Positions 3,054 through 42,761 of a stretch of 64,000 bases of DNA are shown one piece after another. Positions within the stretch are counted from its first letter, which is position 1. The number at the start of each line of letters is the position of its first letter. Under the pieces are notes generated by a model that was not told where the DNA came from, ran no database searches, and was given only the letters and a program-made list of their open reading frames with translations. A program made the position numbers and the translations under genes. The stretch lies in the IMG/VR virus record IMGVR_UViG_3300022868_000009, positions 248,001-312,000 of that record; one strand, written 5' to 3'.

Positions 3054-3803
3054 TTAAATTTTTTGATAATTGATATCAAAATAATAATTAAACTTATAAT
3101 TCTTAGAAGATTCAGTTTGATTATATGTCATAAACAATTCACCTAAACCATTACTAGGAAACTTCTTAACAACATTTAAATTACTTTCCAAATCACCTTT
3201 TTGCTTCGCTTCAAATGTGTATTCTGGGTTATATTTCAAAACTGAACTTGTACCTATTTTTTGATCATTTTCAATAGAAATATATTCAATATACATATCA
3301 ATATTTAAAAATTTATATCTATCTAAAACATTCTTTTCTATATAATAATAAATAGATTGATTAATATCTTTATTTAACAAATCATCATAATAGACAGATT
3401 TAAATGCTCTATTCTCTTTAATTTTAACAAATAAATATTCCTTTAAAATTGTCTTAACATCAATGGTATATTCCCATATAGTACTAATTTCTCTAATTTT
3501 GACGTTTTGTTGGGATTCTTTTATAGTATGATTATCATTTTTTAAAGACGTTAAATTCAATGTAAATACAGTTTCATCTCCTACATGTGTTTCACAATCA
3601 TAATATTGAAATCCATTATTTTTTACTAGATCTCTATCACCAGAAGTGAAAAATTGAGAATATTGTATTGTCTCATTATCAATAATAACATCATCTTCGA
3701 TTTCTAACATTTTAGAACCAAAAAAAGATTTCTCCTCTATCATATTAAGAGTACCAGGTACTCTAGAAGTTTTAAATTTTCTTAGTATAAGATTATTTTT
3801 CAC
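3054..3803 (-). CDS. Hypothetical protein, probably virion-associated
   Basis: Last gene of a structural-looking operon (1116 aa, 1825 aa, 249 aa). Confidence 0.45.
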   Translation of the reverse strand: MKNNLILRKFKTSRVPGTLNMIEEKSFFGSKMLEIEDDVIIDNETIQYSQFFTSGDRDLVKNNGFQYYDCETHVGDETVFTLNLTSLKNDNHTIKESQQNVKIREISTIWEYTIDVKTILKEYLFVKIKENRAFKSVYYDDLLNKDINQSIYYYIEKNVLDRYKFLNIDMYIEYISIENDQKIGTSSVLKYNPEYTFEAKQKGDLESNLNVVKKFPSNGLGELFMTYNQTESSKNYKFNYYFDINYQKI

Positions 3804-6800
3804 TATGTTAAATTCTTTTTTGTATCATCTTTAGATGTATCTAAAACTTCTTTATCTGTAAATATGTAATATTCTTTATCCCAAGTTGATTTAAATATAA
3901 ATCTTTCTACATAACTATAACCAAACTCATCAACCATAGGGTAAATTGATCTATCTTCTTCTGTATTTCTTATCTTTAATACATTTTCCACTGGGTTTAT
4001 TTTAGAATAAATAATCTCAGAAACCTTACCAAAATCTTCCAGATTTTCATTAAACTTATAATTTCTTTCTAATGCATTAAAATAATATTCACCTTCTGTT
4101 ACTCTTGGCATAGTATAACATACTTGAACTTCAACATTATCAAAATATGCATTATAAGTTGGACTTGATATTGGTGTAGCCAAAAATACAACATCAAAAT
4201 CACAATACACACTAAAATCTATATTTATTTCAATGTTACTAGAAGTAACTGCAGAACTTATATCTATACCAGAAATTGTATATTTATCTATAATCCAATA
4301 TGGATTATAAATTGTTGTTTTAGATAAATTATCAGAACTCGTATTATTTATCAAAATATCAACGAGATAGTCTTTAAAAAACAAATTCTTTTCAATGGAT
4401 ATTAACTTATAATATATAAAATCACCCTTTTTTTTAATAATAACATTAATTTCTGATATAATTGCCTCATTGGGAATGTCAAAATTAAAATTAGATAATC
4501 TTAATGTATCTGAATATCCTGTTAATGTTACAACAAGACCCGCTGAAATATCAGGTATTAAAAAATCAATTTTAGCAGAAATATTATCACTTTTATCTAA
4601 AATATTTTCTTCATCAACCCAATTTATAACAGTAGTATAACCTGATGTACCACCAGTTAATCCATTTGTAGTTATTTCAACATCACTAGCAAAAGATTTT
4701 TGACAAAATATTCCATTATGAGATGAATAATCTGTACCATCAAATAATTCAATATTTTTGAAAATAGGTTCATATGGCCCACTATATCTATATATTTCTT
4801 TATTATAAATTTGTGTTTCACCATGTTGTTGAACCTTTTTACTTATGTCTTTCTCATTTATAGTAATTTTTCTTGAAATAGGTTCATTAATGTCATAATT
4901 AACAGACGCACTAGCATCTACAGGTTTATATTTATCATAAATATTAGTTCTTGGACCTTTCAATGCACTATGATTAAATGATTGTTTCTTGATAGTTAAT
5001 AAATCTGGTCTACTAATAGAAACCATATATGGTGGGAAATCTTTGCCCCAAGACTCTAATTCTTCCATGGTACCATTTGTAGTGGCACTTGGAACCATAT
5101 TCATATAAGCATAATTACCATTTTCATCAATATAATGATAATATACATTTCTATCAAATCCATAAGTATTATTTAAATCATTTAAAGCAGATATTACATT
5201 TGAAGCAGTCAATGTAACAGTATTATAACTAATACCTGTATTATTATATGGTGTTCCATCTAATGCCTTAGCATAATAATATCCATAATTCTCACCAAAT
5301 ATTTTAATATTATTTAAATCATATAAATCCTTAAACATTGTTAATTTTGTATTAACAACAATTAATAAATTTTTATACTTATCATTTAAAAATATATCAA
5401 TACCAGTATCAGATGTATCAATATAATTTTCATTAATAATTGCAGAACTTTCAAAATCTAATTCATTTACAACTTCATATAACTCATATGTAGCACCACA
5501 AACAACAAAATCAGAAAAATTAGATGTCATATCATCTTCCTCCCAATTATCTAATGAAACATAAATAGTACAACCAGTATCACCACTAAATTGATATATT
5601 TGTGCAGTTAATCTAGTAGAATCAATATAATAAGAACTTCCAGTTGAATAAAAATGAGAATAATCTCCAGTTGTGTCTATATCATAAAAATCATATAAAG
5701 GTAGAGTTAAACCTGCAAATGTAAAACCTGTGGTTTTTATATAATAATCTTTATAATCTATAAAACTAGCATCATATGATCTTTTTAATTTTAAAGGGCC
5801 ATTGTTAACATAAGCTAAATCTGTAAAACTTGTTAAAGTCATAGTTTGTCCAGTAATAAAACCCCTAATACCTAAATTTTCATAATGCCAATTCACAGTA
5901 TCCATGTATCTTGTTTGATAAAAACTATATCCAGACACATCAACATAATCTGCAATAGTTCTTCCACTATCACCATCACTATTATAAACTGTTTCAATAT
6001 ACTGATAACAAGGATTAAATATAATACTACACTTATATTCATCATATTTCTTTTTACCGGAAATTATATTATAAATTTTATAATTAGAATCTCTAAATAA
6101 ATTTGCAACAGAATCTAAATCAATTCTCAAACCTTTAAAAAGAGTTGAAGCTGCATTATAATTATTTGTTGTTTTAAATATTGAATATTTAGTAGTAGAT
6201 TTAATATATAGTTGACTCTCATATTCATAATACATCTTATTCTTGAAAAAATAATCAAAATAATCAAAAGTAGAACCAACATATAAACTCAAATTAAATT
6301 TTTGACTATCATCATTCATTAAATTTGTTTCAATATTAGTACTTTGTTGAACATACTTTTCATTAGTACCATTATCATGCAAACCACCAACACGATACAT
6401 ATAATCCATATTTTTATCTGTTACACTTGGAGTATCTTTATAAATATTAGTTGTTTTATTGAATTGTGAGCCTACTTTATTATTATTATTTAATTTGTAT
6501 GAATAATCACTGTGACTTATACTATTCATAAAACCCCATTTACAAACTGTCTCATTTTTAATCCACATAGGATTAATATCTTTTGTTTCTGTTATTTGAT
6601 ATAATTCATCTGTAGAAATATACTCTGACGAAACATTCATTATCTTATTTTGACCAGGAACACCTTCTGGCATAACTTTAAATTGTTTAGGAGTTGAATT
6701 ATCTCTAAATTCAGTTGTATATAATTTATGTTCATCAGTATCAACATATTCTGTTTTCTCATAATCAAAATCAGCATAATGTGTATCAACTCTATCAAAA

Positions 6801-9280
6801 TCCCAATCTTTAATATCACTAAATTTAACTCTATAAACAGGATACATTAACGGTTTTCTTAATTTCTTATTTACTCTTATATCTTTAACTACAGAATATT
6901 CTGAATCATTTGATTTAATCCAATATTCTAATTTGGAACTATTAGATTTTATAGCATAATCAGTATCTATATAATACTTTAACTCAATTTCATCATTTTG
7001 ATCTATCGGCAAATTATATATATTTACATATGTTAATGAAGTATTAGAATCAGTTAAAGCTACAATATTTTCATTATAAAACACACCACCAGAATATATA
7101 TTATCATAATCAATACTAGGACTTAATAAATAATCAGTTAAAGTATCAGTTAAAGTATCATATTTCATTAATCCAGTACTAGCACTATTTTCAAACCACT
7201 TAAAAATTACATTATTATTATTATCATAAAAAACATGAGATGTTGAACCAGTAATATCATAACTAGTTGTTTGTGTAATATTTTTTTCATAATATTCTTT
7301 TTTAATAAACAAACCTTCAGTAGTACCCAAAAAAATTGTTCCATCATCTTTTAAATCAAATGTTAAAGGAATACCTTCCATAGACGTATTTGCAGAATTA
7401 TATTCAACAGAAGCTATAGGTTCTAAATCATAATAAACTGTAAAAATACCTGCATCTAATCCATTACTAATAACACTATATAAATTATTATTTTGTACTT
7501 CAATTTTACAATTAAAAACATCTCCTGTTACATTTGTATTATAAAATGTAACATCATATTTATTAGAAAGTTTTACAGACCAAGATACAGTTAAAGTACC
7601 ACCAGATCGAGCACAGGCAAAAATTGTAGAACCTGTAACAAAAATACTTTTAATTTGTTCAGCATCTTCTATACCAGAATTTAAATTAGTAATTGTATCT
7701 TCTACACCACTATCAAAATCTTTAATCCACATTCCTTCATATGTACCAACATACAATACATTATTATCTAAAAATAATGATTGCACACCTGAATTTGGTA
7801 ATGAAGAATTTGAAGTAGTATATGAATTTAATAAAACTAAATCTATATCATATATGAATAAACCATCATCAGCACCAATGTAAATCTTATCATCATTAAA
7901 ATAAACTACATTAAATGGTGGAATTGATTCTGTGATTGATGTATAAGAATAAGCAATATCTGATTTCTCAATAATATTTTGTTCAACTTTTAAAACATGA
8001 AACTTGTTGTCAATATCAACTAAATACAAATCACCATATAATCCCTTGAAATATCCATCATCATCAATATACGTATCACAAGTAAATTCACCAGTTCTGC
8101 CATTTACAACATTTATATAAGATGTACCAGTATTTTGAAAAACAATATCAACAATATTATCACTATGAATATCTGTAATAGATAAATCATAATCACTTAT
8201 AATTTTATATGTATCAACATTATCATCACTCTTTTTAACTACTCTATATAAATCTTCTAAAGCATAAATATAATACTCATTATTATTATCCCAAGTATTA
8301 ATAAAAGGCATGGTTGAACCAGTTGTTCCACTAACAACAAATATATTATTTACAATATCTAAACCATCTATTAATGTAGGTGGTTGATATGAAGTTAAGT
8401 TACAAACCTCATCCATTTGTTCCACATAAAAACCATAATATCTATTAACAGAATATTTATTTAAACCGAAAGGTGATGCAGGTGTATCATCATATAAAAA
8501 TTTAAAGTTGACAATGCTTGGAAATATCAAATTATTTAATTGATACCCCTCCGTTATAAATTGTTCTAATTGAAAATGTGGTTGTTCATAATATAATTTA
8601 TCATCTAAAAAGAAATCCTTTTCAGTATAAGTACCATAATCATAATCAATACCATACCATCTACTAAAATTATATTTTTTAGCATCAAACTCAAATGGAG
8701 ATTCAGGAAATCTGTCATTTTCAGTAAAATTTCTATACATCCAATATCCTAAAGGTGATTGATAAGTTAAATCAAATGTTGTAACACATTTCCATTTATC
8801 CACAATCTCACTTCTAAAATTATTTTTAGTTAAATTTACTATTTCATATGAATTACTATCATAAACTGCAGAATCATCAACTCTTAATATAATAAAATTT
8901 GAAGGTAAATTGTTAGGTCTAATATATAGAGGAGCCAAATATTCAAATTCTTCTTCATACCACTGATCTTGAATATTTTTAGCACCAGCATAATAAATAT
9001 CATCAAATTGACAATCATATGTATTATACATTTTATCACTATCATCTTCATATTTAACTTTAAAAGCTAAATTAGAAGGCAAACCTTTATAAAATATAGG
9101 TAATTGATCCTCCAAATAAGTATTCTTATTCATAGAAAAATGTTTAAATCTTTCATCACTTAATTGTCTATTAACCTTGAAAGATTCTAAATATAAGTTA
9201 TAATCAGTATTAACCACTACACTTACATTTGTTGTAAGTGTAGGATTAGTTCTTATTATTTGAAAACTTTTATCTATCAT
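3803..9280 (-). CDS. Very large virion structural protein with an internal beta-propeller-like segment
   Basis: 1825 aa; repeats such as IYIGADDGLFIYD, LYVGTYEGMWI, IFLGTTEGLFI; many [ST]-G-x-[TS] motifs. Confidence 0.55.
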   Translation of the reverse strand: MIDKSFQIIRTNPTLTTNVSVVVNTDYNLYLESFKVNRQLSDERFKHFSMNKNTYLEDQLPIFYKGLPSNLAFKVKYEDDSDKMYNTYDCQFDDIYYAGAKNIQDQWYEEEFEYLAPLYIRPNNLPSNFIILRVDDSAVYDSNSYEIVNLTKNNFRSEIVDKWKCVTTFDLTYQSPLGYWMYRNFTENDRFPESPFEFDAKKYNFSRWYGIDYDYGTYTEKDFFLDDKLYYEQPHFQLEQFITEGYQLNNLIFPSIVNFKFLYDDTPASPFGLNKYSVNRYYGFYVEQMDEVCNLTSYQPPTLIDGLDIVNNIFVVSGTTGSTMPFINTWDNNNEYYIYALEDLYRVVKKSDDNVDTYKIISDYDLSITDIHSDNIVDIVFQNTGTSYINVVNGRTGEFTCDTYIDDDGYFKGLYGDLYLVDIDNKFHVLKVEQNIIEKSDIAYSYTSITESIPPFNVVYFNDDKIYIGADDGLFIYDIDLVLLNSYTTSNSSLPNSGVQSLFLDNNVLYVGTYEGMWIKDFDSGVEDTITNLNSGIEDAEQIKSIFVTGSTIFACARSGGTLTVSWSVKLSNKYDVTFYNTNVTGDVFNCKIEVQNNNLYSVISNGLDAGIFTVYYDLEPIASVEYNSANTSMEGIPLTFDLKDDGTIFLGTTEGLFIKKEYYEKNITQTTSYDITGSTSHVFYDNNNNVIFKWFENSASTGLMKYDTLTDTLTDYLLSPSIDYDNIYSGGVFYNENIVALTDSNTSLTYVNIYNLPIDQNDEIELKYYIDTDYAIKSNSSKLEYWIKSNDSEYSVVKDIRVNKKLRKPLMYPVYRVKFSDIKDWDFDRVDTHYADFDYEKTEYVDTDEHKLYTTEFRDNSTPKQFKVMPEGVPGQNKIMNVSSEYISTDELYQITETKDINPMWIKNETVCKWGFMNSISHSDYSYKLNNNNKVGSQFNKTTNIYKDTPSVTDKNMDYMYRVGGLHDNGTNEKYVQQSTNIETNLMNDDSQKFNLSLYVGSTFDYFDYFFKNKMYYEYESQLYIKSTTKYSIFKTTNNYNAASTLFKGLRIDLDSVANLFRDSNYKIYNIISGKKKYDEYKCSIIFNPCYQYIETVYNSDGDSGRTIADYVDVSGYSFYQTRYMDTVNWHYENLGIRGFITGQTMTLTSFTDLAYVNNGPLKLKRSYDASFIDYKDYYIKTTGFTFAGLTLPLYDFYDIDTTGDYSHFYSTGSSYYIDSTRLTAQIYQFSGDTGCTIYVSLDNWEEDDMTSNFSDFVVCGATYELYEVVNELDFESSAIINENYIDTSDTGIDIFLNDKYKNLLIVVNTKLTMFKDLYDLNNIKIFGENYGYYYAKALDGTPYNNTGISYNTVTLTASNVISALNDLNNTYGFDRNVYYHYIDENGNYAYMNMVPSATTNGTMEELESWGKDFPPYMVSISRPDLLTIKKQSFNHSALKGPRTNIYDKYKPVDASASVNYDINEPISRKITINEKDISKKVQQHGETQIYNKEIYRYSGPYEPIFKNIELFDGTDYSSHNGIFCQKSFASDVEITTNGLTGGTSGYTTVINWVDEENILDKSDNISAKIDFLIPDISAGLVVTLTGYSDTLRLSNFNFDIPNEAIISEINVIIKKKGDFIYYKLISIEKNLFFKDYLVDILINNTSSDNLSKTTIYNPYWIIDKYTISGIDISSAVTSSNIEINIDFSVYCDFDVVFLATPISSPTYNAYFDNVEVQVCYTMPRVTEGEYYFNALERNYKFNENLEDFGKVSEIIYSKINPVENVLKIRNTEEDRSIYPMVDEFGYSYVERFIFKSTWDKEYYIFTDKEVLDTSKDDTKKNLT

Positions 9281-9294: not shown

Positions 9295-12200
9295 TTATTG
9301 AAAACCTACTGATACTTGTGATTGTGTTGATATATAATTAGCCGTTCTGTGTTGTTTCATATTAAATATCAAAGTAAATTGGAACGGTCTAATACTGTTC
9401 TCAGTTTCTACAAATATTTTCAACGGTCTCTTTAATATACGTGAAACAGGTTTTTCAGTTGGATTTATAGTAAATGAACTTCCACTTACAGCATCAAACT
9501 TAAAATATAAATTTATTGGTATAATCATCTCTTCTTGACCATTTATTAATTTCAACTTTTCCTGTCCTGTGTCAATTAAATCTGATATATCTATAACTAA
9601 TGGATATATACTAGATAAAAATGCATTTTGGTTTGTTAATGTCCCATCAGTCCAACTAATACCAGTTAACAAATTGAACGTATAATCATCTCTAGTAAAA
9701 GTTGTCCCTGTTAATCCAAGATTTGAACCATATGTTCCACCATCAGCATTTAACCAATTATAAGCAGTTGCTTTATCAGACTCTGTTATACCTGAATATA
9801 AATTCTGTCCGTTGTGATTATCAGAAAACCAAAGAAATTGATTGTCTTCTTGATTATGTAGATAACCATCAGCATCAATATAACAGGATGAATCATCTGT
9901 AAATTGAAAGAAACTATTTGTTCCACCAACTGTATAATTTCTATCAGAAAATAAACCTAATGGGTTATTTTGTGCAATATTCTTCAAACTAATATAATAA
10001 TCTTTTATAACATAAATATTATTATAATAAATTCTATCTGCAGTAGCACCACTTATTTCTCCATAATCTTCACATTCAACTATAATATTAGTTTCCGAAT
10101 TATTACCAATTTCAGTTTCTGTTGTACCTTTAAATAATGTAACAAGAAGTTCACCTTTAGCTCTACTAACTTGTTCTTCTAAAGAAGATATCTTATTTGT
10201 TAATGTTTCTAAATAATCAAATAAATTAATTAAATTACCTTGAGCATCTCTAAATGACGTTGCCAAAGTTTTATCATTATGTGCATAATAACTATCATTT
10301 TGAGTAAAACTATCTCTAACGTGTCTATAAACACCTTTAGCATCCATTTCATTATCAAATTCAACTCTTACTGATTCTTGACTATTTTGTAATGTTATTA
10401 ATTGAGAATCATCATTAGTGTTTTCATATTCATCAGGAAAATCAATCTTAACAATATCCGACCATTCTGATTCAATCAAAGCATCGGGCCAACCAACCTC
10501 AGAAATAGATTTAACTTTTATTTCAATAGATTCATTTTCCTTAATGGGAATATCTACTTGATTTATATTTGGTTTTTCTGCATTTGCAACATCTTCAACA
10601 ACCCAATACCACACATTTTTGGTACTATCAAAACTTCTCTCTCTAGGTTTTGTTACATATTCTTTCCAATTAGAAAAGAAACCATTAGTATTTTGTGTTT
10701 GTAATATAGTTTGATTACTTAAAGGTATTTTTTGACCAGATGCAGTTGTTATAACTGTATTAGTTGGTGATGGTGTCATACCAATAGAAGGTGCATTAAT
10801 TTGTGAACTTCTAGGAGTAAATTCAGCACTACTACTTTCAGGATTATTTATAACCGATCCACTTGTTGTTGGATCTGGTTTTAAGTTTGGTTGCGTTAAT
10901 AAACTTGTATCAATAGTTAAACCTTGTTGACCAGATAAATCTTCTAAATTCACAGTAGGTTTAATATCAAAACTCTCTATTGGATTAGTTTGACCATCTT
11001 TAGCACTATATCTATACTGAATTTTAAATGCAACCACATCTTGTATTTTATCTTCAAGACTTCTAGCCATTGGAATATCAAAGAAACCTCTTAATCTATA
11101 TTTAGGGCTTGCAGATAAAGTTGTAACAACATTAGAAATTTGATTAACAATTGAGCCATATTGTTTAGATTCACTCTCTTGTTGTGTTATAAGTCTATTT
11201 AACTCATTTTGAGATTTATTTTTTTCACCAATACTTTTATATTGTTTTGTGTTTAATTCTTTATTTTTTTCAATAATAGAATCATTTAATTGGTTTAATC
11301 TAGACTTAATAGATTCTTTTCTTGTATGTAAATCTTTCTTTTCTTTTGAATTTCCATTATCTGTAAGATGTTTATTAATTTGTACAACTTTAAAATTATC
11401 TATTTCCAATACTGGTTTATTTGGAATTAATGCCTCATCAGTTGGTGTTTGTCTTCTTATTAAATCTTTTAATAATTTACCATAATCATATATATTATCT
11501 AAATAATAACTTGTCAAATCTATCGTATTATCCGTATTTAATACTAAATCATTTGTATAAAATGCACTACCTTGAGACCAAACACTACCAATTATATTAT
11601 TATCAGTATTTACAGGTTTCATAAATACAAGATTATATTCATTATAACCCACACCAATATTAACAGATTTATCTAACTCACCAGCTGAGTATATCTTTAA
11701 AACATCTGTTCCAACAGGAATAGGATCATAACCTTCAACTCTTTCAACTATTATCTTAGGCGTAGATGAAGCTTTACTAATTTCAATTATTTTATATCTA
11801 GTATTACTTTCTTTTTTATTTATTATTATTTCATCATTAATAGATAATTCTTTATTAACACCATCTTTAGTTCTATAAGTTAGAGTATTTAAGTGATACC
11901 AAAATTTCTTTCTTATTGTATCATCCTCTGTATTTAAAACACTAAAAAAACCAACATTATTTAATGTTTGTAAATTAATATCATAAATATCTTCATCCAA
12001 ATATTTATAAGGGTCCAAATTATCAACAACACCTGGTTGAGCCAAGTACCAATTAATAAAAGTGTCATAATTAATATCTGATTTATTCAAAAATGTGTCT
12101 ATAAAACTATTTAAAGAATTTCTTCCTGTCTCTGTTAATTGTCCATAACTACCAACTTGAAATTTTACAATATGTCTCCTTACCAAAACTTTCTTATTCC

Positions 12201-32122: not shown

Positions 32123-32172
32123 TTTCTGATATACTTTTTTTAATATATATAAAAAAATCATACTGATTTTAA

Positions 32173-34554
32173 ATGCAAAACAATTTAACATATTTACTTA
32201 GTAAGAAGTATGATATGACTTTCTCAATGAATTGGGTTGGCACTCAACCAAACCTTTTTAATGTTGGTGATTCTCAAAAATTATCAACAAATGATACAAC
32301 GACGGGAATCAAAAATTTTACATCTTATGACATTTCTACAGAAGAAGAAACTACAAATAGTTATCTAAAAATATTATTTAAATATAAAAATAGTCCTGAA
32401 AATTGTGAAAATTGGAGCGATTTAATACCAATTGAAAATATCACAGGTTTAACATTAAATTCTTCATATACATTTGATATAGAATTACAAGTTTTTAGAG
32501 TTGATGATAGTATAACAGGAAATATACCATCTGATATTTATCTTAACTATGTTAAATTATATGGTGATTATGAATATACAGTTACAGATAGTTTAGCTCT
32601 ACTTTTACCAGGTGAAGAAACAATATTAGAACCTATAGAAACTTATAAAGTATTTGATTTAGAAGATTATCAAATAAACGCAAGAAACCTTAAACTAGGT
32701 GGGTATGAAATAAAATATAGATTTACACAAAATAATGGAAGATCATATACAGAATGGGAAAATTTAACAACAGAAAATTTAAAAACATTAAGATTAGATG
32801 AATTAAGATTTGCTAATGTACAATATTTAATTAAAAATATTGGTACAGACACATTTATAATCAATGATATTACGTTAATAGGAGATTTTCAAAATGTGTC
32901 TGCTGATTATATAAAAGTAAACAGATATGGATTAAGAGAAGATTGTATAACATTTTTTCAAAATACAACCGTAGGTATTAATGCATTTAATAAAAATGCA
33001 TTAACAAACGGATTAAGTTGTTATCAAAATCCATTAACCGATCTAGAAAATAAAGATAAATCTGGGTTTTGGAATCCTTATGACTTTGATAAAATAGTAG
33101 GATTAGCTAATCTATTTGGGGGACATGTTTCAGATATTGCTGGATGGACTTCAACTTATTGTTTAGCTGATCCAGACGGAAACGGTATAGATAAATATTT
33201 ACATGAACATCAACTTAAAAATATAATTGATATGCAAGATGTAAAAATAATAATTCCAGAAAATAAATTTCCAAACGAAACTATCAAAATAAATATATTT
33301 AACTTAGATCTTTTTGATACATTTGAAGTTCATATTATGAAAGACCCATTCAAAGAAGCTTTTGGAATAACAAAAAGACCAGGTGAAGATGATATAGTGT
33401 ACATATGCGAATCAAATCGATTATTTAGAGTTAAACATGCTCAAGCATTTAGAGAAGTTATGAATGCATCAACTTATTATAAAGTTATTCTAGAAAAATA
33501 TGAAGATAGAAAAAATATTCAATTTATTGATGAAGATGCAAAAGATTTAATCGATGAATTAACTAAAAATACTTCTATAGATGAAATACTTGGTATTGAA
33601 AATGAACAAGATGAAGATAAAATCTCAAATAAAGAACAAACATATACATTATCATTTGATAAAATAAGAGCAGAAATACACAAAGACGTACTATTTGAAA
33701 ATTATAATATAAATCAAGATAATACAACAATTTCAAAATCTCAATATGATTTCAAAGATGTAATTGGTAATACTGCTGTAGATTATTTAAAAACAGACCC
33801 TACATTAGGAAAAGGTAATAATAGGTCTTTTATTACTTGGTTTAATTTTAATTATAAATATACATCAGAAAATTATTTATCTAATGAAGTATTTGATGCA
33901 TATACACCAACTAAAAATGCAGTATTTCCTCTATTATATAATTATGATACTACTGAAAAATTAGGTTATAGATACTGGTTAGAATATGATAAATTAATAT
34001 TTCAAATAAATGAAAAATATTTCAGTTTAGAATATAATTTTATGACTGGTATATGGTACGGTATAATAATAAACCTAAACCAAAAACAAGGATCAATATC
34101 ACTGGATATTTATAAAAGAAGTTATGATATTGAAATTACAATGTTTAATAAAGACTACGAAAAAATCACAATGACAACAGAAGATACAATAGAAAACAGT
34201 CACGAACAATATAATACAGGTTATACATATACTGATGCAATTGCTGATGGTTATGAACCTGTTAAAAATATCCAGAATATATATTCTGTTACAGATGATA
34301 ACTTGACAAATGTTAGTAGTATAACATATGAAAATATTGAACCTTCAGAATTCTCACATGATCAATCTATTAAAATTATAGGTTCAGATATACAATATAC
34401 AAACTTAAGGTTATTCAATGACGTTATTAAAGAAGAAAGCCAAGAAAATTTATTAAAACAATTTATTATCAAAGATGCACAATATTTAATTTTATCAGAC
34501 AACTCATCAAAACAAGTCATAACAACAAATTATTGGAACAAAAATTTTAAATAA
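32173..34554 (+). CDS. Neck/head-closure protein (T4 gp14-like core) with extra domains including a LamG-like C-terminus
   Basis: FKEAFG..KRPGEDDIVY...NRLFRV resembles gp14 RP.EGDLIY..LFEI. Confidence 0.55.
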   Translation: MQNNLTYLLSKKYDMTFSMNWVGTQPNLFNVGDSQKLSTNDTTTGIKNFTSYDISTEEETTNSYLKILFKYKNSPENCENWSDLIPIENITGLTLNSSYTFDIELQVFRVDDSITGNIPSDIYLNYVKLYGDYEYTVTDSLALLLPGEETILEPIETYKVFDLEDYQINARNLKLGGYEIKYRFTQNNGRSYTEWENLTTENLKTLRLDELRFANVQYLIKNIGTDTFIINDITLIGDFQNVSADYIKVNRYGLREDCITFFQNTTVGINAFNKNALTNGLSCYQNPLTDLENKDKSGFWNPYDFDKIVGLANLFGGHVSDIAGWTSTYCLADPDGNGIDKYLHEHQLKNIIDMQDVKIIIPENKFPNETIKINIFNLDLFDTFEVHIMKDPFKEAFGITKRPGEDDIVYICESNRLFRVKHAQAFREVMNASTYYKVILEKYEDRKNIQFIDEDAKDLIDELTKNTSIDEILGIENEQDEDKISNKEQTYTLSFDKIRAEIHKDVLFENYNINQDNTTISKSQYDFKDVIGNTAVDYLKTDPTLGKGNNRSFITWFNFNYKYTSENYLSNEVFDAYTPTKNAVFPLLYNYDTTEKLGYRYWLEYDKLIFQINEKYFSLEYNFMTGIWYGIIINLNQKQGSISLDIYKRSYDIEITMFNKDYEKITMTTEDTIENSHEQYNTGYTYTDAIADGYEPVKNIQNIYSVTDDNLTNVSSITYENIEPSEFSHDQSIKIIGSDIQYTNLRLFNDVIKEESQENLLKQFIIKDAQYLILSDNSSKQVITTNYWNKNFK

Positions 34555-34580: not shown

Positions 34581-34611
34581 AAAAAAAAGAGCGCCGAAGC
34601 ACTCTTTTTTT
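34581..34611. terminator. Bidirectional terminator
   Basis: A8-gagcgc-cgaa-gcactc-T7 between convergent genes. Confidence 0.7.
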
Positions 34612-37218: not shown

Positions 37219-37289
37219 ATTTTATATTAAGATTTTAAGATTTTAATTATATATCTTCTTATAGAAGTCTAAAAAAGTCAAAAATTTTA

Positions 37290-37544
37290 TTAATTATTAT
37301 GTTTATCATAATACTTATCAACATTATAATTCCAAAAATTTCTTAATACTAAATTTGAATTAATTACATCAATAGCAAGTTTTTGAAGCCATCCTAAAAA
37401 TTCATATGTAGTATCATTATGTAAAAGATAACCAGAAGTCATTTTCTCAACCAATTTATTCTCATAATCAACCCCAGTATTTTTTAAATTATCATTTCTG
37501 TGTTTTAATTCATACAATTCTCTTATATGTCTATCTTTTTCCAT
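37290..37544 (-). CDS. Hypothetical protein, possibly baseplate-associated
   Basis: Coupled to the gp6-like gene. Confidence 0.45.
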   Translation of the reverse strand: MEKDRHIRELYELKHRNDNLKNTGVDYENKLVEKMTSGYLLHNDTTYEFLGWLQKLAIDVINSNLVLRNFWNYNVDKYYDKHNN

Positions 37545-39496
37545 TATACAGTTTTATTCTCTTTCTTAGTAACACCATCAAATATTATATTAATACTTGT
37601 TAAACCATCAGAATCTGGATTCTCATTGTAATATAAATTGTCTCTATCTTTCCAACCACCTCTTATAATAGCATATTCATCTTTACTAATAATAATATCA
37701 CCATGCACTGGGTCTAAACCTATTATAGCATTATTATCATAAGAATTTACTTTATCTTTATCATTAATAACCAATTCACTTATAGGTGTTATACTTTTTG
37801 TATTTATACTAACAATAGATTTTTTTGATAATTTAGAAAATTTTAAATTTTTTTGTTTCAAACCTTTTTGAATTAAATTAGAATTTCTTGCATGATAATC
37901 TTCATTATTTTGACTTACAAAATGAATATCAATAGAATCAACACCATCAACTCCTTTTAAAATTTTGATTAAATCTGATTTTACTATTCTATCAAATCTT
38001 TCGTTATTTAATAAATAATCAGACATTTTAGATATAATATCTTGTTTAATATTAGTTTCAATAACATCATCATATCTTCTAACATAAACATAAGAAACAT
38101 ATTTAGTTATCTTAGGTTGAATTATAACCAATTCAGAAGTCATACTCAATATACCCATTTTTTTAATATAATTAACAATTTTTTGCTGTTCTACATCATC
38201 TAAATAAAATACATCAACAGGAACATTAAAATAATTAACACTATCAGTAAAATAATTAGATATTTTAGGTATCAAGTATAAATAAATTTGATTGTCATTT
38301 GTATTACTAAAATACTCATAATAAGCATTCTCAAAATTTATCATTTTGTTTTGAATATATGCACTACTCTTGCCATTTGAAATAGATTTTTTTAATTCTT
38401 GCATCTTTGTATTGATAACAGTAGATGTAATATTAGAACCAAAGTTATTATCATCAGACTTATTAAAAGCATTTATTTTACTAAACATATTTAATCTCTT
38501 TAAATGAAATATAAATTGTGGAGGAGTAGATAAAATAAAATTCCTAGAAACATAAGGAATTAAAGATTTTGTAAATTTAGGTGATTCGCCATTACTAGAC
38601 AATCCAATATTAACATCAACTTCAATATTAAATAAATCTTCCATTTCTAAAGAATTACCATCACTATCATTAATCATATCAATAAACGTCCAATCATTAT
38701 TAATTGGATTTAAAATATCACCCCTTTGACCTTCTGTTAATAAATATTTAACTTCTATAATTGAACCTAATGCAGGTATAAAACCAAAATCATCAGTACC
38801 AAATTCAACATCTACACCACCATTAAAACCTGTTTTAACAACACATGATAATTCACCAGATGTCATACTATATTTATGTTCTTTAATAGTTAATGGATAA
38901 CCATTAACATAAACTAAAACATTAAAATTTTCAATTAAAGATTCACTAGAAATATTAACACTTATAGATTGATCAGGCTCTGCAGCACCAGTAAAAGTTT
39001 GAGTTTCAAATTGACCTTGAATAATATTTGCAAAAAATTGTGTACTTGTGTTCATATTATAAATATTAGAATCAGTACCAAGTACGATAGAATATTTTAA
39101 ATTATTCGTTTTATTTTTAACAACAGTATAATTATTAATAGTAAATGTGCCAGAAGATATTTCCTCATTAATATTAATACCTGGTTTTAATTTAAACATT
39201 AATGTACCTGTAGCACTAATCGGTCTAGTAGGGCTATGTCCTGCAATTCTAGATATATTCCAAATAACTTTAGGATCAATTGTTTGTTCAATATTTATTT
39301 GTTCAACCGATCTTTTTTGATAAATCATAGTATGTCTAAAAACCTCTTCAATGAAAATTAACATTTGACCATAAGGGGAACTAGAATTAAAAAGAAGATC
39401 AGATTTCTGATACTGGTTTCGTAACCAAGTATTAGTTTGATTTACAAGACTATCAAATTTTAATTCTATAAAATTAAATATATTCTTTGCAGGCAT
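37544..39496 (-). CDS. Baseplate wedge protein (T4 gp6/BW2-like)
   Basis: SI..I.RIAGHSP.R..SA.G.L, IQG, V.FG...FG.IP..GS.IEV.YL.TEG.RG, GE. Confidence 0.75.
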   Translation of the reverse strand: MPAKNIFNFIELKFDSLVNQTNTWLRNQYQKSDLLFNSSSPYGQMLIFIEEVFRHTMIYQKRSVEQINIEQTIDPKVIWNISRIAGHSPTRPISATGTLMFKLKPGININEEISSGTFTINNYTVVKNKTNNLKYSIVLGTDSNIYNMNTSTQFFANIIQGQFETQTFTGAAEPDQSISVNISSESLIENFNVLVYVNGYPLTIKEHKYSMTSGELSCVVKTGFNGGVDVEFGTDDFGFIPALGSIIEVKYLLTEGQRGDILNPINNDWTFIDMINDSDGNSLEMEDLFNIEVDVNIGLSSNGESPKFTKSLIPYVSRNFILSTPPQFIFHLKRLNMFSKINAFNKSDDNNFGSNITSTVINTKMQELKKSISNGKSSAYIQNKMINFENAYYEYFSNTNDNQIYLYLIPKISNYFTDSVNYFNVPVDVFYLDDVEQQKIVNYIKKMGILSMTSELVIIQPKITKYVSYVYVRRYDDVIETNIKQDIISKMSDYLLNNERFDRIVKSDLIKILKGVDGVDSIDIHFVSQNNEDYHARNSNLIQKGLKQKNLKFSKLSKKSIVSINTKSITPISELVINDKDKVNSYDNNAIIGLDPVHGDIIISKDEYAIIRGGWKDRDNLYYNENPDSDGLTSINIIFDGVTKKENKTV

Positions 39497-40152
39497 TATT
39501 GTCTAATATTATTTTTTAAAACATCTCCAACTGTCTCCACAATTGTTGTTAAATTATTTTTTTCAACATGTATAAATTTATCATATATTTGAAAATCAAA
39601 TTTAAATAAACCATCTCTTTCTTTTGTAATATTTAATTTAACATCATGTTTATTACTAACATTAATATCAAAATTAAACGCTAAATATTTACACGGAACC
39701 ATAGTAACTTGTGGATCATATTTAAAACCATAAATAGATATTTCATTAACATCATTTTTAGAAAACCATTCATTAATCATAACAGCAGGCGAATTAATAA
39801 ATTCCGATAAAATTTTTATATTTTTTCCAAATTTATTTTTCTTAAAAACATTAGAAAGATTTTTTTTAAACTCATCTATATCTTCAAAATAAATAGCCTT
39901 ATATAAACAATTAATATCATATAAATATAAGCATTCATTTTTAGTTAAATATTGTTTATCTGAATCAACAACAAATATCAACTTTGTATGTAACACTTGT
40001 GTTTTCTTATAATATAATTTATTAAAAGCAACAACCAATTTCAAATCATCAGAACCTTCTATTTTCTCATAAACATGATCGACAGTTAAAACTTGACTAT
40101 CATCAAATTTTTCTTTCGTAGCTTTATATATTTCGTCAATACTTATATTCAT
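39496..40152 (-). CDS. Hypothetical protein
   Basis: Within the structural operon. Confidence 0.5.
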   Translation of the reverse strand: MNISIDEIYKATKEKFDDSQVLTVDHVYEKIEGSDDLKLVVAFNKLYYKKTQVLHTKLIFVVDSDKQYLTKNECLYLYDINCLYKAIYFEDIDEFKKNLSNVFKKNKFGKNIKILSEFINSPAVMINEWFSKNDVNEISIYGFKYDPQVTMVPCKYLAFNFDINVSNKHDVKLNITKERDGLFKFDFQIYDKFIHVEKNNLTTIVETVGDVLKNNIRQ

Positions 40153-42761
40153 TATAATAATTTTCTTGTTATTTCATATCTTTCTGAAACTGTAGACGTA
40201 TTAGATTCATCAACTCTTAATATTCTAATATTCATTCCTTTATAATAATTCATATCAGAATAATTTTTCATAGTTAAACCACTACTAGTACTATCCAAAT
40301 TAATATTATAGTAATATGTTGTTCCAGTCATACCAGTTGATTGTATCGTATAAACGCCTGTTAAATCTACAACAGTATCTCCACTATTAAAATAAAAATT
40401 GTCTACATAAACTGTATCACCAGATTGAAATATAGGATATTTATAAGGTTCTAAATAAAGTGAACTAGTTGAACCACTAACAAATGTTATTAACCTTTCA
40501 TTAACATTAGTATGATTATAATAAGAATTTGCATATGTAGAACCAGTTGGATTCGAAGAATTATATTCATATAAATCCACTGGTAAATTAACACTAAACA
40601 ATCTAATCTCTGAATTTGAATCACCGTCATAAAAATTCATATTCACATTTAACTTATTTAACACCGATGTCATATTTGCATCAATAGTTATATCCATAAC
40701 TTGCGCATATTCTAAATCTTTTGTTAACATAATATATAATTCACCACCAAAATCAACAATATCATCATTATCAACTGTCAATTTAACTTGATTAGTTGTC
40801 GGTATAATTATTGGATAACTTGTACCACTAGCAGTTTGGTTATAATTATATATTTCAGTTGAAGTTATATCATATATTTCTGAATATTCAGAATTCAAAG
40901 CTCTCATTCTCAATGTAGGATAATTACCTGTATAATCAGTTTCTATTTTAATTGAAGGTGAATCCACAAATTGATAAGTAGAATATAAAGTTAACAATTC
41001 TTCTAAATTAATAATTTGTGATTTAATTAAATCTAAATCTGTTTGAGAATAAATCAAACTTTTTATGTTCCATAACTCTTCATGAAAATAAGTATATCCA
41101 CTTAAAACTTTCATATAATTATCACTCATTTGAGCATTTGTCTGCAATATTCTCTTATATAAATCTAGACTAAATGAATTATAGATACTAGTTGGATCAT
41201 AACTCATAGGCAAAACATCATTATCAATATCATAATTTATATTTAATATAAAATCATAACTAACACCATCTTGTACCCCGTTACTCACATATTTTGGATA
41301 TGGTCTTATTAATGTGCCATCTGGATCAACTGCACCATCCAAATCGTTATTTGGATTATTAAGAAATTCTACACCATATAAATTAGTTGTAATATTTCCT
41401 GATCCATCATCAATTTCATAATACCATAAAATAGCATTAAAATAAAAATCAGAAGGAGCCTCGTTATTATAACTATAACTATTAAATTCATTAAATGTTT
41501 CTAAATTAGCAATAGTCATTTTATAATAATGTTCTGTTTCAAAGTCAATTGTTAAACCATCAATATCATCTGAATTAAAACTAACAAGACTCTCGACATA
41601 ATCAGATTGATCTAAATCAACATTATTAGTTAATTCTATACCATAATAATTTCCTTTTTTCCTCAATTTATCACCACTTGAACAAATATATGTTTTATCG
41701 TCTGTATCAAAATAACCAAAATAAGAGCCTGGATAATCAGACGGATTTAATCTTATAGGAGAATTCAATGATTCTGCGCCCATAATTTCATCTTGTATTT
41801 CTTCTGGAATAATAGGTAATTCTAAATTTGGATAATAATTATTATTATCTTCTATTTTAAATAAGATATTTGGAGTTTGACCCTCGTGATGAGGAATCTT
41901 AGCTATTATCTCATTGTAATTTCTTCTACTTGTCTGTACTTGGCTATCTACTTGTGTATCACCAGCATATTGTATAAATCTAGTATAATCTAAATAAATT
42001 GTAGCCGATTCGCTGATTATACTATGTACAGTAGAACCTAAATCAAGATATGTTATACTGCCAACAACAGTCACATTTTCAATTGTGTATGTTGTGTCTA
42101 CTAAATATATGTTTGTTGTACCTGAAAAATTAACTTCATCACCAATTTTGAATTTAGCAACACTTGATATTTCCACACTTATTGTACCACCACTGTAGTA
42201 ACCAGTTGAACTATCTACAACACAACTATAATAATTAATTTCTCTTTCTTTCCATAAATACTCTCTAAAATAATCTGTATTAGTTACAGTAGATGCATTC
42301 GGATTTTGAAAATCAGGAAGATTTTTATCCCAGTCTACCAAATGTACACCTGGTTCAAAATCCATCAAATTTAATTTTCTACACCATTTCCAAAAAATCA
42401 TTTCGGTAGGTGTTTGTAACTCTGATATATTGTAGAAATCCGTGTTCGAGTTTATTCTACTTTCTCGTTCAACATCATCATAATTAGCAACATAATTTCT
42501 TAATGATTCAATTAAATTATCACCAAATGATAAAGCAGGTGGACTTGGTTCATAACAGAAAAAGTCTCCTTTTTTATTGGTTGTAATATCAAAATTTAAT
42601 GTATCTCCAGATTGATTTGGAAAATTAAGACATACAAATTTTGTAAAATTTACTTTGAAATTCTGATTATTATGCGCTTGATTAATATCTTCTGCTGCAC
42701 TTGGAAAAGCATAAAAACTTGTTCCACGTTCTTTCATTGCTTTGTAAAGTGGTGTAGCCAT
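40152..42761 (-). CDS. Large virion structural protein
   Basis: 869 aa, MATPL start, [ST]-G-x-[TS]-rich, late-type promoter at ~42785. Confidence 0.55.
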   Translation of the reverse strand: MATPLYKAMKERGTSFYAFPSAAEDINQAHNNQNFKVNFTKFVCLNFPNQSGDTLNFDITTNKKGDFFCYEPSPPALSFGDNLIESLRNYVANYDDVERESRINSNTDFYNISELQTPTEMIFWKWCRKLNLMDFEPGVHLVDWDKNLPDFQNPNASTVTNTDYFREYLWKEREINYYSCVVDSSTGYYSGGTISVEISSVAKFKIGDEVNFSGTTNIYLVDTTYTIENVTVVGSITYLDLGSTVHSIISESATIYLDYTRFIQYAGDTQVDSQVQTSRRNYNEIIAKIPHHEGQTPNILFKIEDNNNYYPNLELPIIPEEIQDEIMGAESLNSPIRLNPSDYPGSYFGYFDTDDKTYICSSGDKLRKKGNYYGIELTNNVDLDQSDYVESLVSFNSDDIDGLTIDFETEHYYKMTIANLETFNEFNSYSYNNEAPSDFYFNAILWYYEIDDGSGNITTNLYGVEFLNNPNNDLDGAVDPDGTLIRPYPKYVSNGVQDGVSYDFILNINYDIDNDVLPMSYDPTSIYNSFSLDLYKRILQTNAQMSDNYMKVLSGYTYFHEELWNIKSLIYSQTDLDLIKSQIINLEELLTLYSTYQFVDSPSIKIETDYTGNYPTLRMRALNSEYSEIYDITSTEIYNYNQTASGTSYPIIIPTTNQVKLTVDNDDIVDFGGELYIMLTKDLEYAQVMDITIDANMTSVLNKLNVNMNFYDGDSNSEIRLFSVNLPVDLYEYNSSNPTGSTYANSYYNHTNVNERLITFVSGSTSSLYLEPYKYPIFQSGDTVYVDNFYFNSGDTVVDLTGVYTIQSTGMTGTTYYYNINLDSTSSGLTMKNYSDMNYYKGMNIRILRVDESNTSTVSERYEITRKLL

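What the first reader, a model, noticed from the sequence alone, without database searches (positions are those of the whole stretch)
3803..42761. Dispersed [S/T]-G-x-[T/S] motif saturating virion proteins: possible glycosylation sequon for the two phage glycosyltransferases
Seen: the structural ORFs contain very many non-tandem SGxT/TGxT motifs, e.g. VSGTTGST, LTGGTSGYT, FSGDTGCT (3803); ISGAT, YSGIT, LTGTT (9295); ISGSTGATLSGYT, DSGNT, SSGQT (30419); QSGDT, FSGTT, PTGST, STGMTGTT (40152). I noticed few in the enzymes. The phage encodes GT2 and GT4-like enzymes at 44.8-48.4 kb. Established: some phages glycosylate their virions. Inference: a surface sequon for O-glycosylation or another modification.
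Basis: inference. Interest (0 to 1): 0.6.

Follow-up and report, generated by a model that had tools for sequence, protein, structure and literature searches.

The report
Ser-Gly-x-Thr loop motif in huge-phage tail proteins
A four-residue motif (Ser/Thr-Gly-x-Thr) really is about five times too frequent in six large tail-appendage proteins of this uncultured huge phage and its close relatives, where it mostly sits at the ends of beta-strands. Whether it is a sugar-attachment site for the phage's glycosyltransferases remains unproven, and the comparative evidence on that is mixed.

Summary

**The enrichment.** [ST]-G-x-[ST] occurs 62 times in six large proteins, against 11-13 expected from global or local shuffles. 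The preferred form is SGxT or TGxT, with hydrophobic residues at -1 and +4. The rest of the 345-kb contig is near chance (74 vs 63). The capsid, portal, neck-like and gp6-like wedge proteins are not enriched, and T4 virion proteins are not either.

**Level of selection.** The signal is at the protein level: codon use in the motif is ordinary and the other five reading frames carry 0-4 hits.

**Structure.** In AlphaFold models, most motifs lie at strand-loop junctions of Ig-like and small beta-barrel domains. About a third of those in p869 are tight hairpin tips.

**Lineage specificity.** Orthologues of three unrelated families are enriched in this clade of Mahaphage-like huge phages. They are at chance in the sister clade, although S, T and G content is the same.

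**Link to the glycosyltransferases.** GT2 and the GT4-like gene are present in 5 of 5 motif-rich genomes tested and absent from 5 of 5 motif-poor outgroup genomes. That is essentially one phylogenetic event. Two ingroup lineages keep both GTs while their p869 orthologue has lost or never had the motif. A second, large glycan cluster does not track the motif.

**Verdict.** This is a real, unexplained lineage trait. The sequon reading is possible (about 0.4 for any trans-acting recognition, about 0.2 for these two GTs) but not demonstrated.

The parts
3803..9280 (-). p1825, a large virion-type protein with no Pfam or PHROG hit. It has homologues in Mahaphage-like and Lak phages. It carries 17 motifs against 2.4 expected.
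   Evidence: Thirteen of the 17 motifs lie in segments that the G001 and G002 orthologues lack. The LR756501 orthologue has 13 vs 1.9; the LR756502, LR745206 and LR756504 orthologues have 0-3 vs about 2.
9295..12645 (-). p1116 (phrog_29329, function unknown). Weak enrichment only: 5 vs 1.7, all in the C-terminal 260 residues.
26959..28797 (-). p612, a tail-fibre or tail-spike-like protein with 9 motifs vs 2.8. It shares its first ~200 residues with p400.
   Evidence: Weak phrog_4636 'tail spike' hit. Paralogy with p400 at E 2e-20.
29212..30414 (-). p400, a paralogue of the p612 N-terminus, with 8 motifs vs 1.5.
30419..32191 (-). p590, which has a conserved N-terminal domain followed by a chain of Ig/cadherin-like beta-sandwich domains. 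It carries 11 motifs vs 1.4.
   Evidence: AlphaFold pLDDT 85.8. Foldseek matches tandem Ig-like adhesins and cadherins at E 1e-8, and the ESM Atlas gives similar look-alikes. The 52 homologues carry well above their expected counts (2-15 motifs against 0.4-2.4 expected; weakest in the short ones), with an odds ratio of 13.7.
40152..42761 (-). p869, a protein of the baseplate gene module with two small six-stranded beta-barrel domains (residues 174-258 and 750-840). It carries 12 motifs vs 1.4, seven of them in the last 110 residues.
   Evidence: AlphaFold pLDDT 81.8. VIA-align Z 8-9.6 to beta-barrel domains of phage tail proteins and endosialidase. 120 orthologues average 6.5 motifs vs 1.1 expected.
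37544..39496 (-). gp6-like baseplate wedge subunit. A structural protein without the motif (0 vs 0.7), used as an internal negative control.
32173..34554 (+). Neck-like / 'Gp88 family' virion protein. Not enriched (2 vs 0.8).
44761..45399 (-). GT2-family (GT-A fold) glycosyltransferase, 212 aa and consisting only of the GT-A catalytic domain. Candidate modifier; its substrate is unknown.
   Evidence: Pfam PF00535 at 54.8 bits. Best solved relative is GalT1 of the Fap1 glycosylation pathway, at only E 1e-7. Orthologues are in LR756501, G001, G002 and G005, and absent from LR756502, LR745206, LR756504, G003 and G004.
45415..46587 (-). Thymidylate synthase with canonical catalytic and folate-binding motifs plus ~120 aa of insertions. 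It lies between the two GTs.
   Evidence: The same GT2-ThyA-GT4 neighbourhood is found in L138 and in L073/L129.
47153..48370 (-). GT-B / GT4-like glycosyltransferase, 405 aa. Candidate modifier; its substrate is unknown.
   Evidence: phrog_7162 at 1e-46. Pfam hits are below cut-off, and there is no PDB sequence match. It has the same genome distribution as GT2.

Best explanation
**Shown.** The unit is hydrophobic-[S>T]-G-x-[T>>S]-hydrophobic. It sits mostly where a beta-strand ends and the next begins. That includes tight 2-4-residue hairpin tips in Ig/cadherin-like and small beta-barrel domains of a few large tail or baseplate appendage proteins. It is selected at the protein level. It is specific to one clade of Mahaphage-like huge phages. 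It recurs in at least three unrelated protein families whose orthologues in the sister clade have the same composition but no motif.

**Inferred.** The same coupled Ser/Thr pair around a Gly has been fixed at many loops in several proteins of one lineage only. The most economical cause is a factor of that lineage that reads this loop. The leading candidate is a cytoplasmic protein O-glycosyltransferase that decorates exposed loops of the distal tail appendages before or during assembly. The GT2 and GT4-like genes 2-6 kb upstream of p869 are the named candidates. In that scheme GT4 would start the glycan and GT2 would extend it, by analogy with serine-rich-repeat adhesin glycosylation. My estimates are about 0.4 for 'trans-acting recognition or modification site' and about 0.2 for 'acceptor of these two particular GTs'.
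For: - **Strength and specificity of the enrichment.** 62 vs 11-13; SG.T is 11-fold over expectation; permuted motifs reach only 1-2x.
- **Protein-level signal.** Synonymous codons are used as in the rest of the proteins, and the other five frames hold 0-4 hits.
- **Coupling of S/T at -1 with S/T at +2 around Gly.** The odds ratio is 5.0 in crown p869 orthologues and 13.7 in the p590 family. It is 0.7-0.8 in outgroup or subclade orthologues and 1.3 in T4 virion proteins, at identical S, T and G content.
- **In-place substitutions.** At aligned loops, FSGxT stands against FDGN or YNVSN, and [VT]TGxT against ITGGI.
- **Parallel enrichment in other families.** p1825 and p590 orthologues are enriched in LR756501, G001, G002 and G005 and are at chance in LR756502, LR745206 and LR756504.
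- **Location.** Motifs lie at strand ends or hairpin tips in two confident models. Cys is enriched 8-fold at -2 and +5, which fits cross-strand partners.
- **GT distribution.** GT2 and GT4 are present in 5 of 5 motif-rich genomes and 0 of 5 outgroup genomes.
- **Glycan capacity.** The phage carries much more glycan machinery than these two genes.
- **Precedent.** Virion glycosylation by phage GTs is established in mycobacteriophages (Freeman et al. 2023, as cited in PMC12619734).
Against: - There is no direct evidence of any modification.
- The GT/motif coincidence is one branch of the tree, on which many other genes must also have changed.
- Seven or more contigs of one ingroup subclade, plus L138, keep GT2 (55-69% identity) and/or GT4 (49-62% identity) next to p869. 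Their p869 has 0-2 motifs. Two p1825 orthologues come from the same samples as subclade contigs, but I could not show they belong to the same phages; they are also at chance (L227, L242).
- Within the ingroup, enrichment is graded and protein-specific. The p1825 orthologues of G001 and G005 have only 3 vs 1.
- GT2 and GT4 are embedded with ThyA, RNase H and a HAD-like gene, as early nucleotide-metabolism genes usually are.
- The large GT11/FkbM glycan cluster is present in motif-poor LR756502 and LR745206 and absent from motif-rich LR756501 and G001.
- Non-structural proteins show no depletion of the motif (74 vs 63).
- Capsid, portal, neck and wedge proteins are not enriched.
- Thr at a strand start and Gly in a turn are what a purely structural loop would also prefer.
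Confidence: 0.4

Rival explanations
1. Purely structural loop motif. S-G-x-T is a turn or strand-cap sequence: Gly takes the turn conformation, Thr starts the next strand, and the Ser/Thr hydroxyls cap the backbone. This lineage happens to favour it in its beta-sandwich and beta-barrel appendage domains. Nothing is attached, and the GTs act elsewhere.
For: - Secondary-structure assignments (DSSP) on both models place most motifs at strand ends or in 2-4-residue hairpins.
- Hydrophobic residues at -1 and +4 and Cys at -2 and +5 fit antiparallel pairing.
- T is preferred to S at +3 (81%), as expected for a strand residue.
- The GTs are retained in lineages whose p869 lacks the motif.
- The motif is not depleted elsewhere in the proteome.
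Against: - The same folds in orthologues of the sister clade, and T4 fibres, Hoc and baseplate proteins, show no coupling (odds ratio 0.7-1.3). The sequence is therefore neither required by the fold nor generally favoured.
- This rival gives no reason why three or more unrelated families of one lineage converged on it.
- The variable position is hydrophobic in a third of sites, which is odd for a free turn tip.
Confidence: 0.35
2. By-product of module acquisition. The lineage gained motif-bearing Ig-like, beta-barrel or short collagen-like modules by domain shuffling. The excess then reflects which domains are present, not selection on a motif.
For: - 13 of the 17 motifs in p1825 lie in segments absent from the G001 and G002 orthologues.
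- The C-terminal Ig-like parts of the p590 family are variable, with 102 motif columns.
- Relatives carry collagen-like (G-S/T-S/T)n runs and Big_2-like domains that contain the motif.
- Some p590 homologues carry precomputed Pfam hits to Ig-like families (PF16403, PF12245, PF19077).
Against: - Motif-rich regions of different proteins share no detectable sequence similarity.
- In p869 the motifs arose by substitution at aligned loops of a conserved domain.
- This rival only moves the question to why those modules carry the motif.
Confidence: 0.15
3. GT2 and GT4 serve another substrate, such as host envelope glycans or DNA, and are unrelated to the motif. This statement concerns the GTs only and is compatible with either reading of the motif.
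For: - The conserved GT2-ThyA-GT4 neighbourhood sits beside RNase H.
- The GTs are kept in motif-poor lineages.
- Phage GTs are best known for DNA glucosylation and serotype conversion (PMC12619734).
Against: - The ThyA is canonical (LPPCH, GLPFNIASY, DLGPVYGKQW), so it is not a hydroxymethylase.
- No Tet/JBP match was found on the contig. That search also found nothing in its control genomes, and the contig is only ~48% complete.
- GT2 is a bare GT-A domain of 212 aa, with no room for the membrane part of GtrB-type enzymes.
Confidence: 0.5
4. Chance or amino-acid composition.
For: The proteins are somewhat rich in S, T and G.
Against: z is about 15 against global and local shuffles. Permuted motifs are near expectation. 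The enrichment is replicated in more than 170 homologues.
Confidence: 0.01

Closest known systems
Mycobacteriophage virion glycosylation (Freeman et al. 2023, Cell Host Microbe; known here only through its citation in PMC12619734)
   Same: Phage-encoded glycosyltransferases modify virion proteins in the cytoplasm.
   Different: In the mycobacteriophages the glycans are on the C-termini of the capsid and tail-tube subunits. Here the capsid protein is not enriched, and the motif is dispersed over loops of tail appendage proteins. Nothing is shown experimentally here.
Fold-dependent O-glycosylation consensus sites of eukaryotic EGF and TSR repeats (POFUT, POGLUT, EOGT). From general knowledge.
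   Same: A short Ser/Thr-containing consensus is read only in the context of a folded loop between paired strands. The occasional C-x-[ST]-G-x-T-x-C form seen here resembles those Cys-flanked sites.
   Different: The enzymes, cellular compartment and folds are unrelated. Only ~4% of sites here have flanking Cys.
Serine-rich-repeat adhesin glycosylation (a GtfA/B GT4 starts the glycan; GT2/GalT1-type enzymes extend it)
   Same: A cytoplasmic GT4 + GT2 pairing. The best solved relative of the window's GT2 is GalT1 (5hea). The p590 model resembles adhesin-type Ig-like chains, including SraP.
   Different: The acceptor there is a long low-complexity Ser-rich repeat, not dispersed loops. The similarity to GalT1 is weak (E 1e-7, N-terminal GT-A core only).
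General O-glycosylation of Bacteroidota, with the sequon D-[ST]-[AILVMT]
   Same: It is a defined three-residue O-glycosylation sequon in the likely host phylum.
   Different: That sequon is not enriched here (26 vs 28). It also acts on exported proteins, whereas virions assemble in the cytoplasm.
Two-residue (type I'/II') beta-hairpin turns with Gly
   Same: Gly is in the turn, polar or beta-branched residues flank it, and hydrophobic cross-strand neighbours surround it.
   Different: Ordinary hairpins do not show a lineage-restricted 5-14-fold coupling of S/T at both flanks.

Membership tests
Protein O-glycosylation sequon | The motif is over-represented beyond composition in the putative substrates | tested here: met
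   62 vs 11-13 in six proteins; SG.T is 11-fold over expectation.
Protein O-glycosylation sequon | A glycan is covalently attached to the Ser/Thr of the motif | not testable with these tools
   This needs mass spectrometry of virions or of co-expressed proteins, and the phage is uncultured.
Protein O-glycosylation sequon | The motif co-varies with the transferase across genomes | tested here: inconclusive
   5 of 5 motif-rich genomes have GT2 + GT4 and 0 of 5 outgroup genomes do. This is one branch of the tree, and GT-positive lineages with motif-poor p869 exist.
Protein O-glycosylation sequon | The sites are exposed on the folded substrate | tested here: inconclusive
   Secondary-structure assignments (DSSP) put 8 of 12 (p869) and about 6 of 11 (p590) at strand ends or hairpin tips, and most of the rest in loops. 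No coordinates or assembled-particle model were available to measure accessibility.
Bacteroidota general O-glycosylation | D-[ST]-[AILVMT] sequon | tested here: not met
   26 observed vs 28.2 +/- 5.5.
N-glycosylation | N-x-[ST] sequon enrichment | tested here: not met
   80 vs 83.
Ordinary beta-turn (structural only) | The motif lies in turns or strand junctions | tested here: met
   plus the Cys pair at -2/+5.
Ordinary beta-turn (structural only) | The same preference appears in homologous folds and in other phage beta-rich virion proteins | tested here: not met
   Outgroup orthologues have an odds ratio of 0.7. T4 virion proteins total 32 vs 25.7 with an odds ratio of 1.3.
Collagen-like G-x-y repeat | Long tandem period-3 Gly runs | tested here: not met
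   G..G..G occurs once vs 1.2 expected in the six window proteins, and 45 of 62 motifs are isolated. Such runs do exist in proteins of relatives.
GT2 family (window 44761-45399) | Match to PF00535 above the curated cut-off | tested here: met
   54.8 bits against a cut-off of 23.3.
GT4 / GT-B family (window 47153-48370) | Match to GT-B Pfam models above the cut-off | tested here: not met
   PF13692 at 18.5 bits and PF13439 at 16.6 bits are below their cut-offs. The protein does match phrog_7162 'glycosyltransferase' at 1e-46. A GT-B fold is likely, but the family assignment stays open.
DNA-hypermodification module (TS-like hydroxymethylase + GTs) | The TS homologue carries hydroxymethylase-type changes, such as Asp in place of the dUMP-specifying Asn | tested here: not met
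   GLPFNIASY, LPPCH and DLGPVYGKQW are all canonical, and TIGR03284 scores 307 bits.

The most novel reading that the evidence does not exclude
S/T-G-x-T at beta-hairpin tips is a fold-dependent sequon. A phage-encoded cytoplasmic O-glycosyltransferase system (GT4-like initiator and GT2 extender, or another enzyme of the clade) reads it. The system coats the distal tail appendages of a widespread clade of 350-735-kb phages with glycans. This would be the first defined acceptor motif for phage virion glycosylation.
Probability: 0.2. Interest if true: 0.8.

Novelty: new variant of a known kind. Interest (0 to 1): 0.45.

Why it matters
**If the motif is an acceptor site.**
- Glycosylation sites on uncultured huge-phage virions could be predicted from sequence alone.
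- Phage virion glycosylation would extend beyond the actinobacteriophages.
- There would be a compact enzyme/sequon pair to test, and possibly to use for cytoplasmic glycoengineering.

**If it is only structural.** It is still a clean example of lineage-wide convergence on one loop sequence across unrelated proteins, and that calls for an explanation.

Tried and rejected
- **DNA-level cause rejected.** Codon use in the motif is ordinary and the other frames are empty.
- **Composition and local low complexity rejected**.
- **Shared sequence module between motif-rich regions rejected.** The only similarity is between the p400 and p612 N-termini.
- **Family scans of the six proteins.** Pfam gave nothing. 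PHROGs gave a strong match for p1116 to a family of unknown function and several weak matches for p612.
- **Fold search of p869.** Foldseek of the whole model against the PDB gave no match at E<1e-3. VIA-align recognised only its two beta-barrel domains.
- **Gene presence in the +/-10-kb flanks of p869.** No crown-specific gene was found.
- **Large glycan cluster at contig 62-79 kb as the modifier.** Its GT11 genes occur in motif-poor genomes and are missing from motif-rich LR756501 and G001.
- **Hydroxymethylase reading of the ThyA homologue rejected**.
- **Tet/JBP search.** It was empty, but its controls were empty too, so it is uninformative.
- **Whole-contig search of the GT-positive, motif-poor subclade.** The records behind L091 and L158 are not held. 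Only p869 and its neighbours could be scored there.
- **L227 and L242.** They come from the same samples as subclade contigs and their p1825 orthologues are not enriched. I could not show that they belong to the same phages.
- **Literature.** Searches found no paper on this motif.


Full report
**What the window is**

The window is bases 248001-312000 of a single 344,634-bp contig with 25% G+C. CheckV rates the contig as about 48% of a genome.

It encodes T4-like replication and virion genes:
- a UvsW-like helicase and a single-chain type II topoisomerase;
- a gp6-like baseplate wedge protein;
- a gp23-like capsid protein, a portal and a terminase.

Its nearest relatives by protein similarity are the 630-735-kb 'uncultured phage' genomes LR756501-LR756504 and LR745206. 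Lak Prevotella phages and a Flavobacterium phage follow. It is therefore a huge phage of the Mahaphage type, probably with a Bacteroidota host. The host assignment is an inference from the relatives.

Six minus-strand ORFs carry far more [ST]-G-x-[ST] than composition predicts:

| ORF | Label | Observed | Expected |
|---|---|---|---|
| 3803-9280 | p1825 | 17 | 2.4 |
| 40152-42761 | p869 | 12 | 1.4 |
| 30419-32191 | p590 | 11 | 1.4 |
| 29212-30414 | p400 | 8 | 1.5 |
| 26959-28797 | p612 | 9 | 2.8 |
| 9295-12645 | p1116 | 5 | 1.7 |

Pooled, the count is 62 against 11.1 +/- 3.2. Shuffling only within 20-residue blocks gives 13.2 +/- 3.2, so local composition does not explain it.

The signal is specific:
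- SG.T is 34 vs 3 and TG.T is 17 vs 3, while SG.S and TG.S are only about 2-fold.
- All permutations of the same residues reach 1-2-fold.
- S/T on only one side of the Gly is at or below expectation.
- N-x-S/T and the Bacteroidota sequon D-[ST]-[AILVMT] are at chance.
- 45 of the 62 motifs are isolated, and there is no collagen-like period-3 Gly run in these six proteins.

Codon use within the motif matches the proteins' overall usage, and the other five frames hold 0-4 hits. The constraint therefore acts on protein, not DNA.

The wider context is a hydrophobic residue at -1 and +4 and few Lys nearby.

'Saturating virion proteins' is an overstatement. Almost the whole genome-wide excess (136 vs 74) lies in these few proteins. 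The following are not enriched:
- gp6-like wedge: 0 vs 0.7
- neck-like protein 32173-34554: 2 vs 0.8
- capsid protein: 2 vs 1.2
- portal: 0 vs 0.6

**What the carriers are, and where the motif sits**

None of the six has a Pfam family.

- **p590.** It models with pLDDT 85.8 as a conserved N-terminal domain followed by Ig/cadherin-like beta-sandwich domains. Foldseek matches tandem adhesin and cadherin repeats at E 1e-8. Some homologues carry Ig-like Pfam hits.
- **p869.** It lies in the baseplate gene block and models with pLDDT 81.8. It contains two six-stranded beta-barrels (residues 174-258 and 750-840) like those inserted in phage tailspikes and tail proteins, with Z 8-9.6.
- **p400 and p612.** They share their first ~200 residues, and p612 weakly matches tail-spike PHROGs.

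I mapped the motifs onto the secondary-structure assignments (DSSP) of the two models.
- **p869.** Four motifs are exact 2-4-residue hairpin turns (51-54, 762-765, 793-796, 812-815). Four more start or end a strand. Two are in longer loops, one is inside a strand, and one is in a low-confidence helix.
- **p590.** About six of eleven are at strand ends and most of the rest are in loops.

Across 1,156 distinct sites from homologues, Cys is enriched about 8-fold at -2 and at +5. These positions would face each other across an antiparallel pair.

The motif is therefore a strand-loop junction, often a hairpin tip.

**Why it is not an ordinary turn**

*p869 family.* It has over 1,100 homologues. The best 120, all at least 43% identical, average 6.5 motifs against 1.1 expected. 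The outgroup orthologues in LR756502, LR745206 and LR756504 (33-36% identical) have 1-2, which is chance.

S, T and G content and the number of Gly per protein are the same in each group. The odds ratio linking S/T at -1 to S/T at +2 around Gly differs sharply:

| Group | Odds ratio |
|---|---|
| Crown clade | 5.0 |
| Outgroup | 0.7 |
| One ingroup subclade | 0.8 |

At well-aligned loops the crown has FSGxT where others have FDGN or YNVSN. It has [VT]TGxT where others have ITGGI.

About 18 alignment columns of intermediate to high frequency account for the excess. The many rare columns are what chance would give. The picture is thus a limited set of sites gained at different depths, not free turnover.

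*Other families.*
- The 52 p590 homologues carry well above their expected counts (2-15 motifs against 0.4-2.4 expected; weakest in the short ones), with an odds ratio of 13.7.
- The p590 and p1825 orthologues of LR756501 are enriched (8 vs 0.7 and 13 vs 1.9). Those of the three outgroup genomes are not.
- The p590 orthologues of G001, G002 and G005 have 11-12 vs ~1.3.

*Control.* Twenty-seven T4 proteins were scored, nearly all of them virion proteins, including all fibres, the baseplate and Hoc. They total 32 vs 25.7, with an odds ratio of 1.3.

The fold does not require the motif, and phage beta-rich proteins do not generally favour it. It is a trait of one lineage, expressed in several unrelated proteins.

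The trait is graded. In the p1825 family, strong enrichment is limited to this phage, LR756501, L228 and L232. In p1825, 13 of the 17 motifs lie in segments that the G001 and G002 orthologues lack.

**The link to the glycosyltransferases**

*In favour.* GT2 (44761-45399) and the GT-B-like ORF (47153-48370) have orthologues in every motif-rich genome tested: this contig, LR756501, G001 (complete), G002 and G005. They have none in LR756502, LR745206, LR756504, G003 or G004. GT2 lies 2-8 kb upstream of p869 in most ingroup contigs with enough flank.

*Against.*
- On the p869 tree this is a single branch.
- A subclade (L075, L078, L074, L076, L091, L072, L080, L157) carries GT2 at 55-58% identity and/or GT4 at 49-51% identity. 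Its p869 has 0-2 motifs.
- L138 has the closest GT2, ThyA and GT4 of all (69%, 56% and 62% identity), and its p869 has 2 motifs.
- I could not score other carrier families in that subclade, because its long contig is not held.
- The two GTs flank a thymidylate synthase whose catalytic and folate motifs are fully canonical. They lie next to an RNase H. The GT2-ThyA-GT4 arrangement recurs in L138 and in L073/L129. That is a nucleotide-metabolism neighbourhood, not a late-gene one.

*A second glycan locus.* The contig also holds a ~17-kb glycan cluster outside the window. It contains:
- a HAD + nucleotidyltransferase fusion;
- a GDP-mannose-dehydratase-like epimerase;
- two GT11 genes and a second GT2;
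- FkbM-type and other methyltransferases;
- about ten unassigned ORFs.

Its GT11 genes are found in motif-poor LR756502 and LR745206 and are missing from motif-rich LR756501 and G001. That cluster therefore does not explain the motif.

**Conclusion**

*Shown:*
- a real, protein-level, lineage-restricted enrichment of hydrophobic-[S>T]-G-x-[T>>S]-hydrophobic;
- its location at strand-loop junctions of Ig-like and beta-barrel domains;
- its restriction to a handful of large tail-appendage proteins.

*Inferred:* something particular to the lineage selects for it.

My ranking of the explanations is:
- Recognition or modification by a trans-acting factor, most plausibly O-glycosylation: about 0.4. 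The two window GTs as the responsible enzymes: about 0.2.
- A purely structural loop preference: about 0.35.
- A by-product of acquiring motif-bearing modules: about 0.15.

The decisive experiment is co-expression of a motif-rich domain with the GTs, followed by mass spectrometry.

Noticed in passing
Outside the window: G000:C1:62001-80000 (locus L189): A ~17-kb co-directional glycan-biosynthesis cluster. It holds a HAD + nucleotidyltransferase fusion, an NAD epimerase / GDP-mannose-dehydratase-like gene, two GT11 (fucosyltransferase family) genes, a second GT2, FkbM and other methyltransferases, and about ten unassigned ~260-aa ORFs. GT11 homologues occur in LR756502 and LR745206 but not in LR756501 or G001.
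   Followed up: partly
window 18121-21384 (+): A single-polypeptide type II topoisomerase of 1087 aa (ATPase, Toprim and GyrA-like breakage-reunion domains). It is 56% identical to that of LR756501. In several listed relatives (Xanthomonas and Salmonella phages) the matching region is annotated as two subunits.
   Followed up: partly
window 45415-46587 (-): A thymidylate synthase with fully canonical catalytic and folate motifs, but 390 aa long, so it carries ~120 aa of insertions. The GT2-ThyA-GT4 neighbourhood is conserved in L138 and in L073/L129.
   Followed up: partly
L103 3-791 (-), L034 8120-8950 (+), L043 5244-6578 (+): Relatives encode proteins with long collagen-like (G-S/T-S/T)n runs. 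One also has a poly-Thr tract. These inflate motif counts there, and no such runs occur in the six window proteins.
   Followed up: partly
Motif sites in alignments A1 and A2: Cys is enriched about 8-fold at positions -2 and +5 of the motif, giving C-x-[ST]-G-x-T-x-C in ~4% of sites. This suggests cross-strand disulfides clamping some of these hairpins.
   Followed up: no
window 26959-28797 and 29212-30414 (-): Two adjacent paralogous fibre-like genes share their first ~200 residues (E 2e-20), including a Y-[IT]-x-L-S-G-S-[ST]...I-x-G-D-L-V-P segment, and then diverge completely. From memory, that segment resembles a motif common in phage tail fibres.
   Followed up: partly
window 34610-35485 (-): An M23 peptidase domain protein sits inside the tail/baseplate block. 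It is probably the tail-associated cell-wall hydrolase.
   Followed up: no
window 54000-64000 (+): A run of about 25 small (85-170 aa) co-directional ORFs with very strong G-over-C skew (up to +0.55). It follows a minus-strand block with skew down to -0.5. The function was not examined.
   Followed up: no
window 35717-36781 (+): A 354-aa ORF with 15% Ser, with no Pfam or PHROG hit, on the opposite strand to the surrounding tail genes. It has no SGxT motif despite its Ser content.
   Followed up: no
Whole contig: A second near-identical assembly of 348,222 bp exists (IMGVR_UViG_3300023257_000007 = Ga0222658_1000003). CheckV rates the 344,634-bp record as only ~48% complete, so absences on this contig are not absences from the phage.
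   Followed up: no
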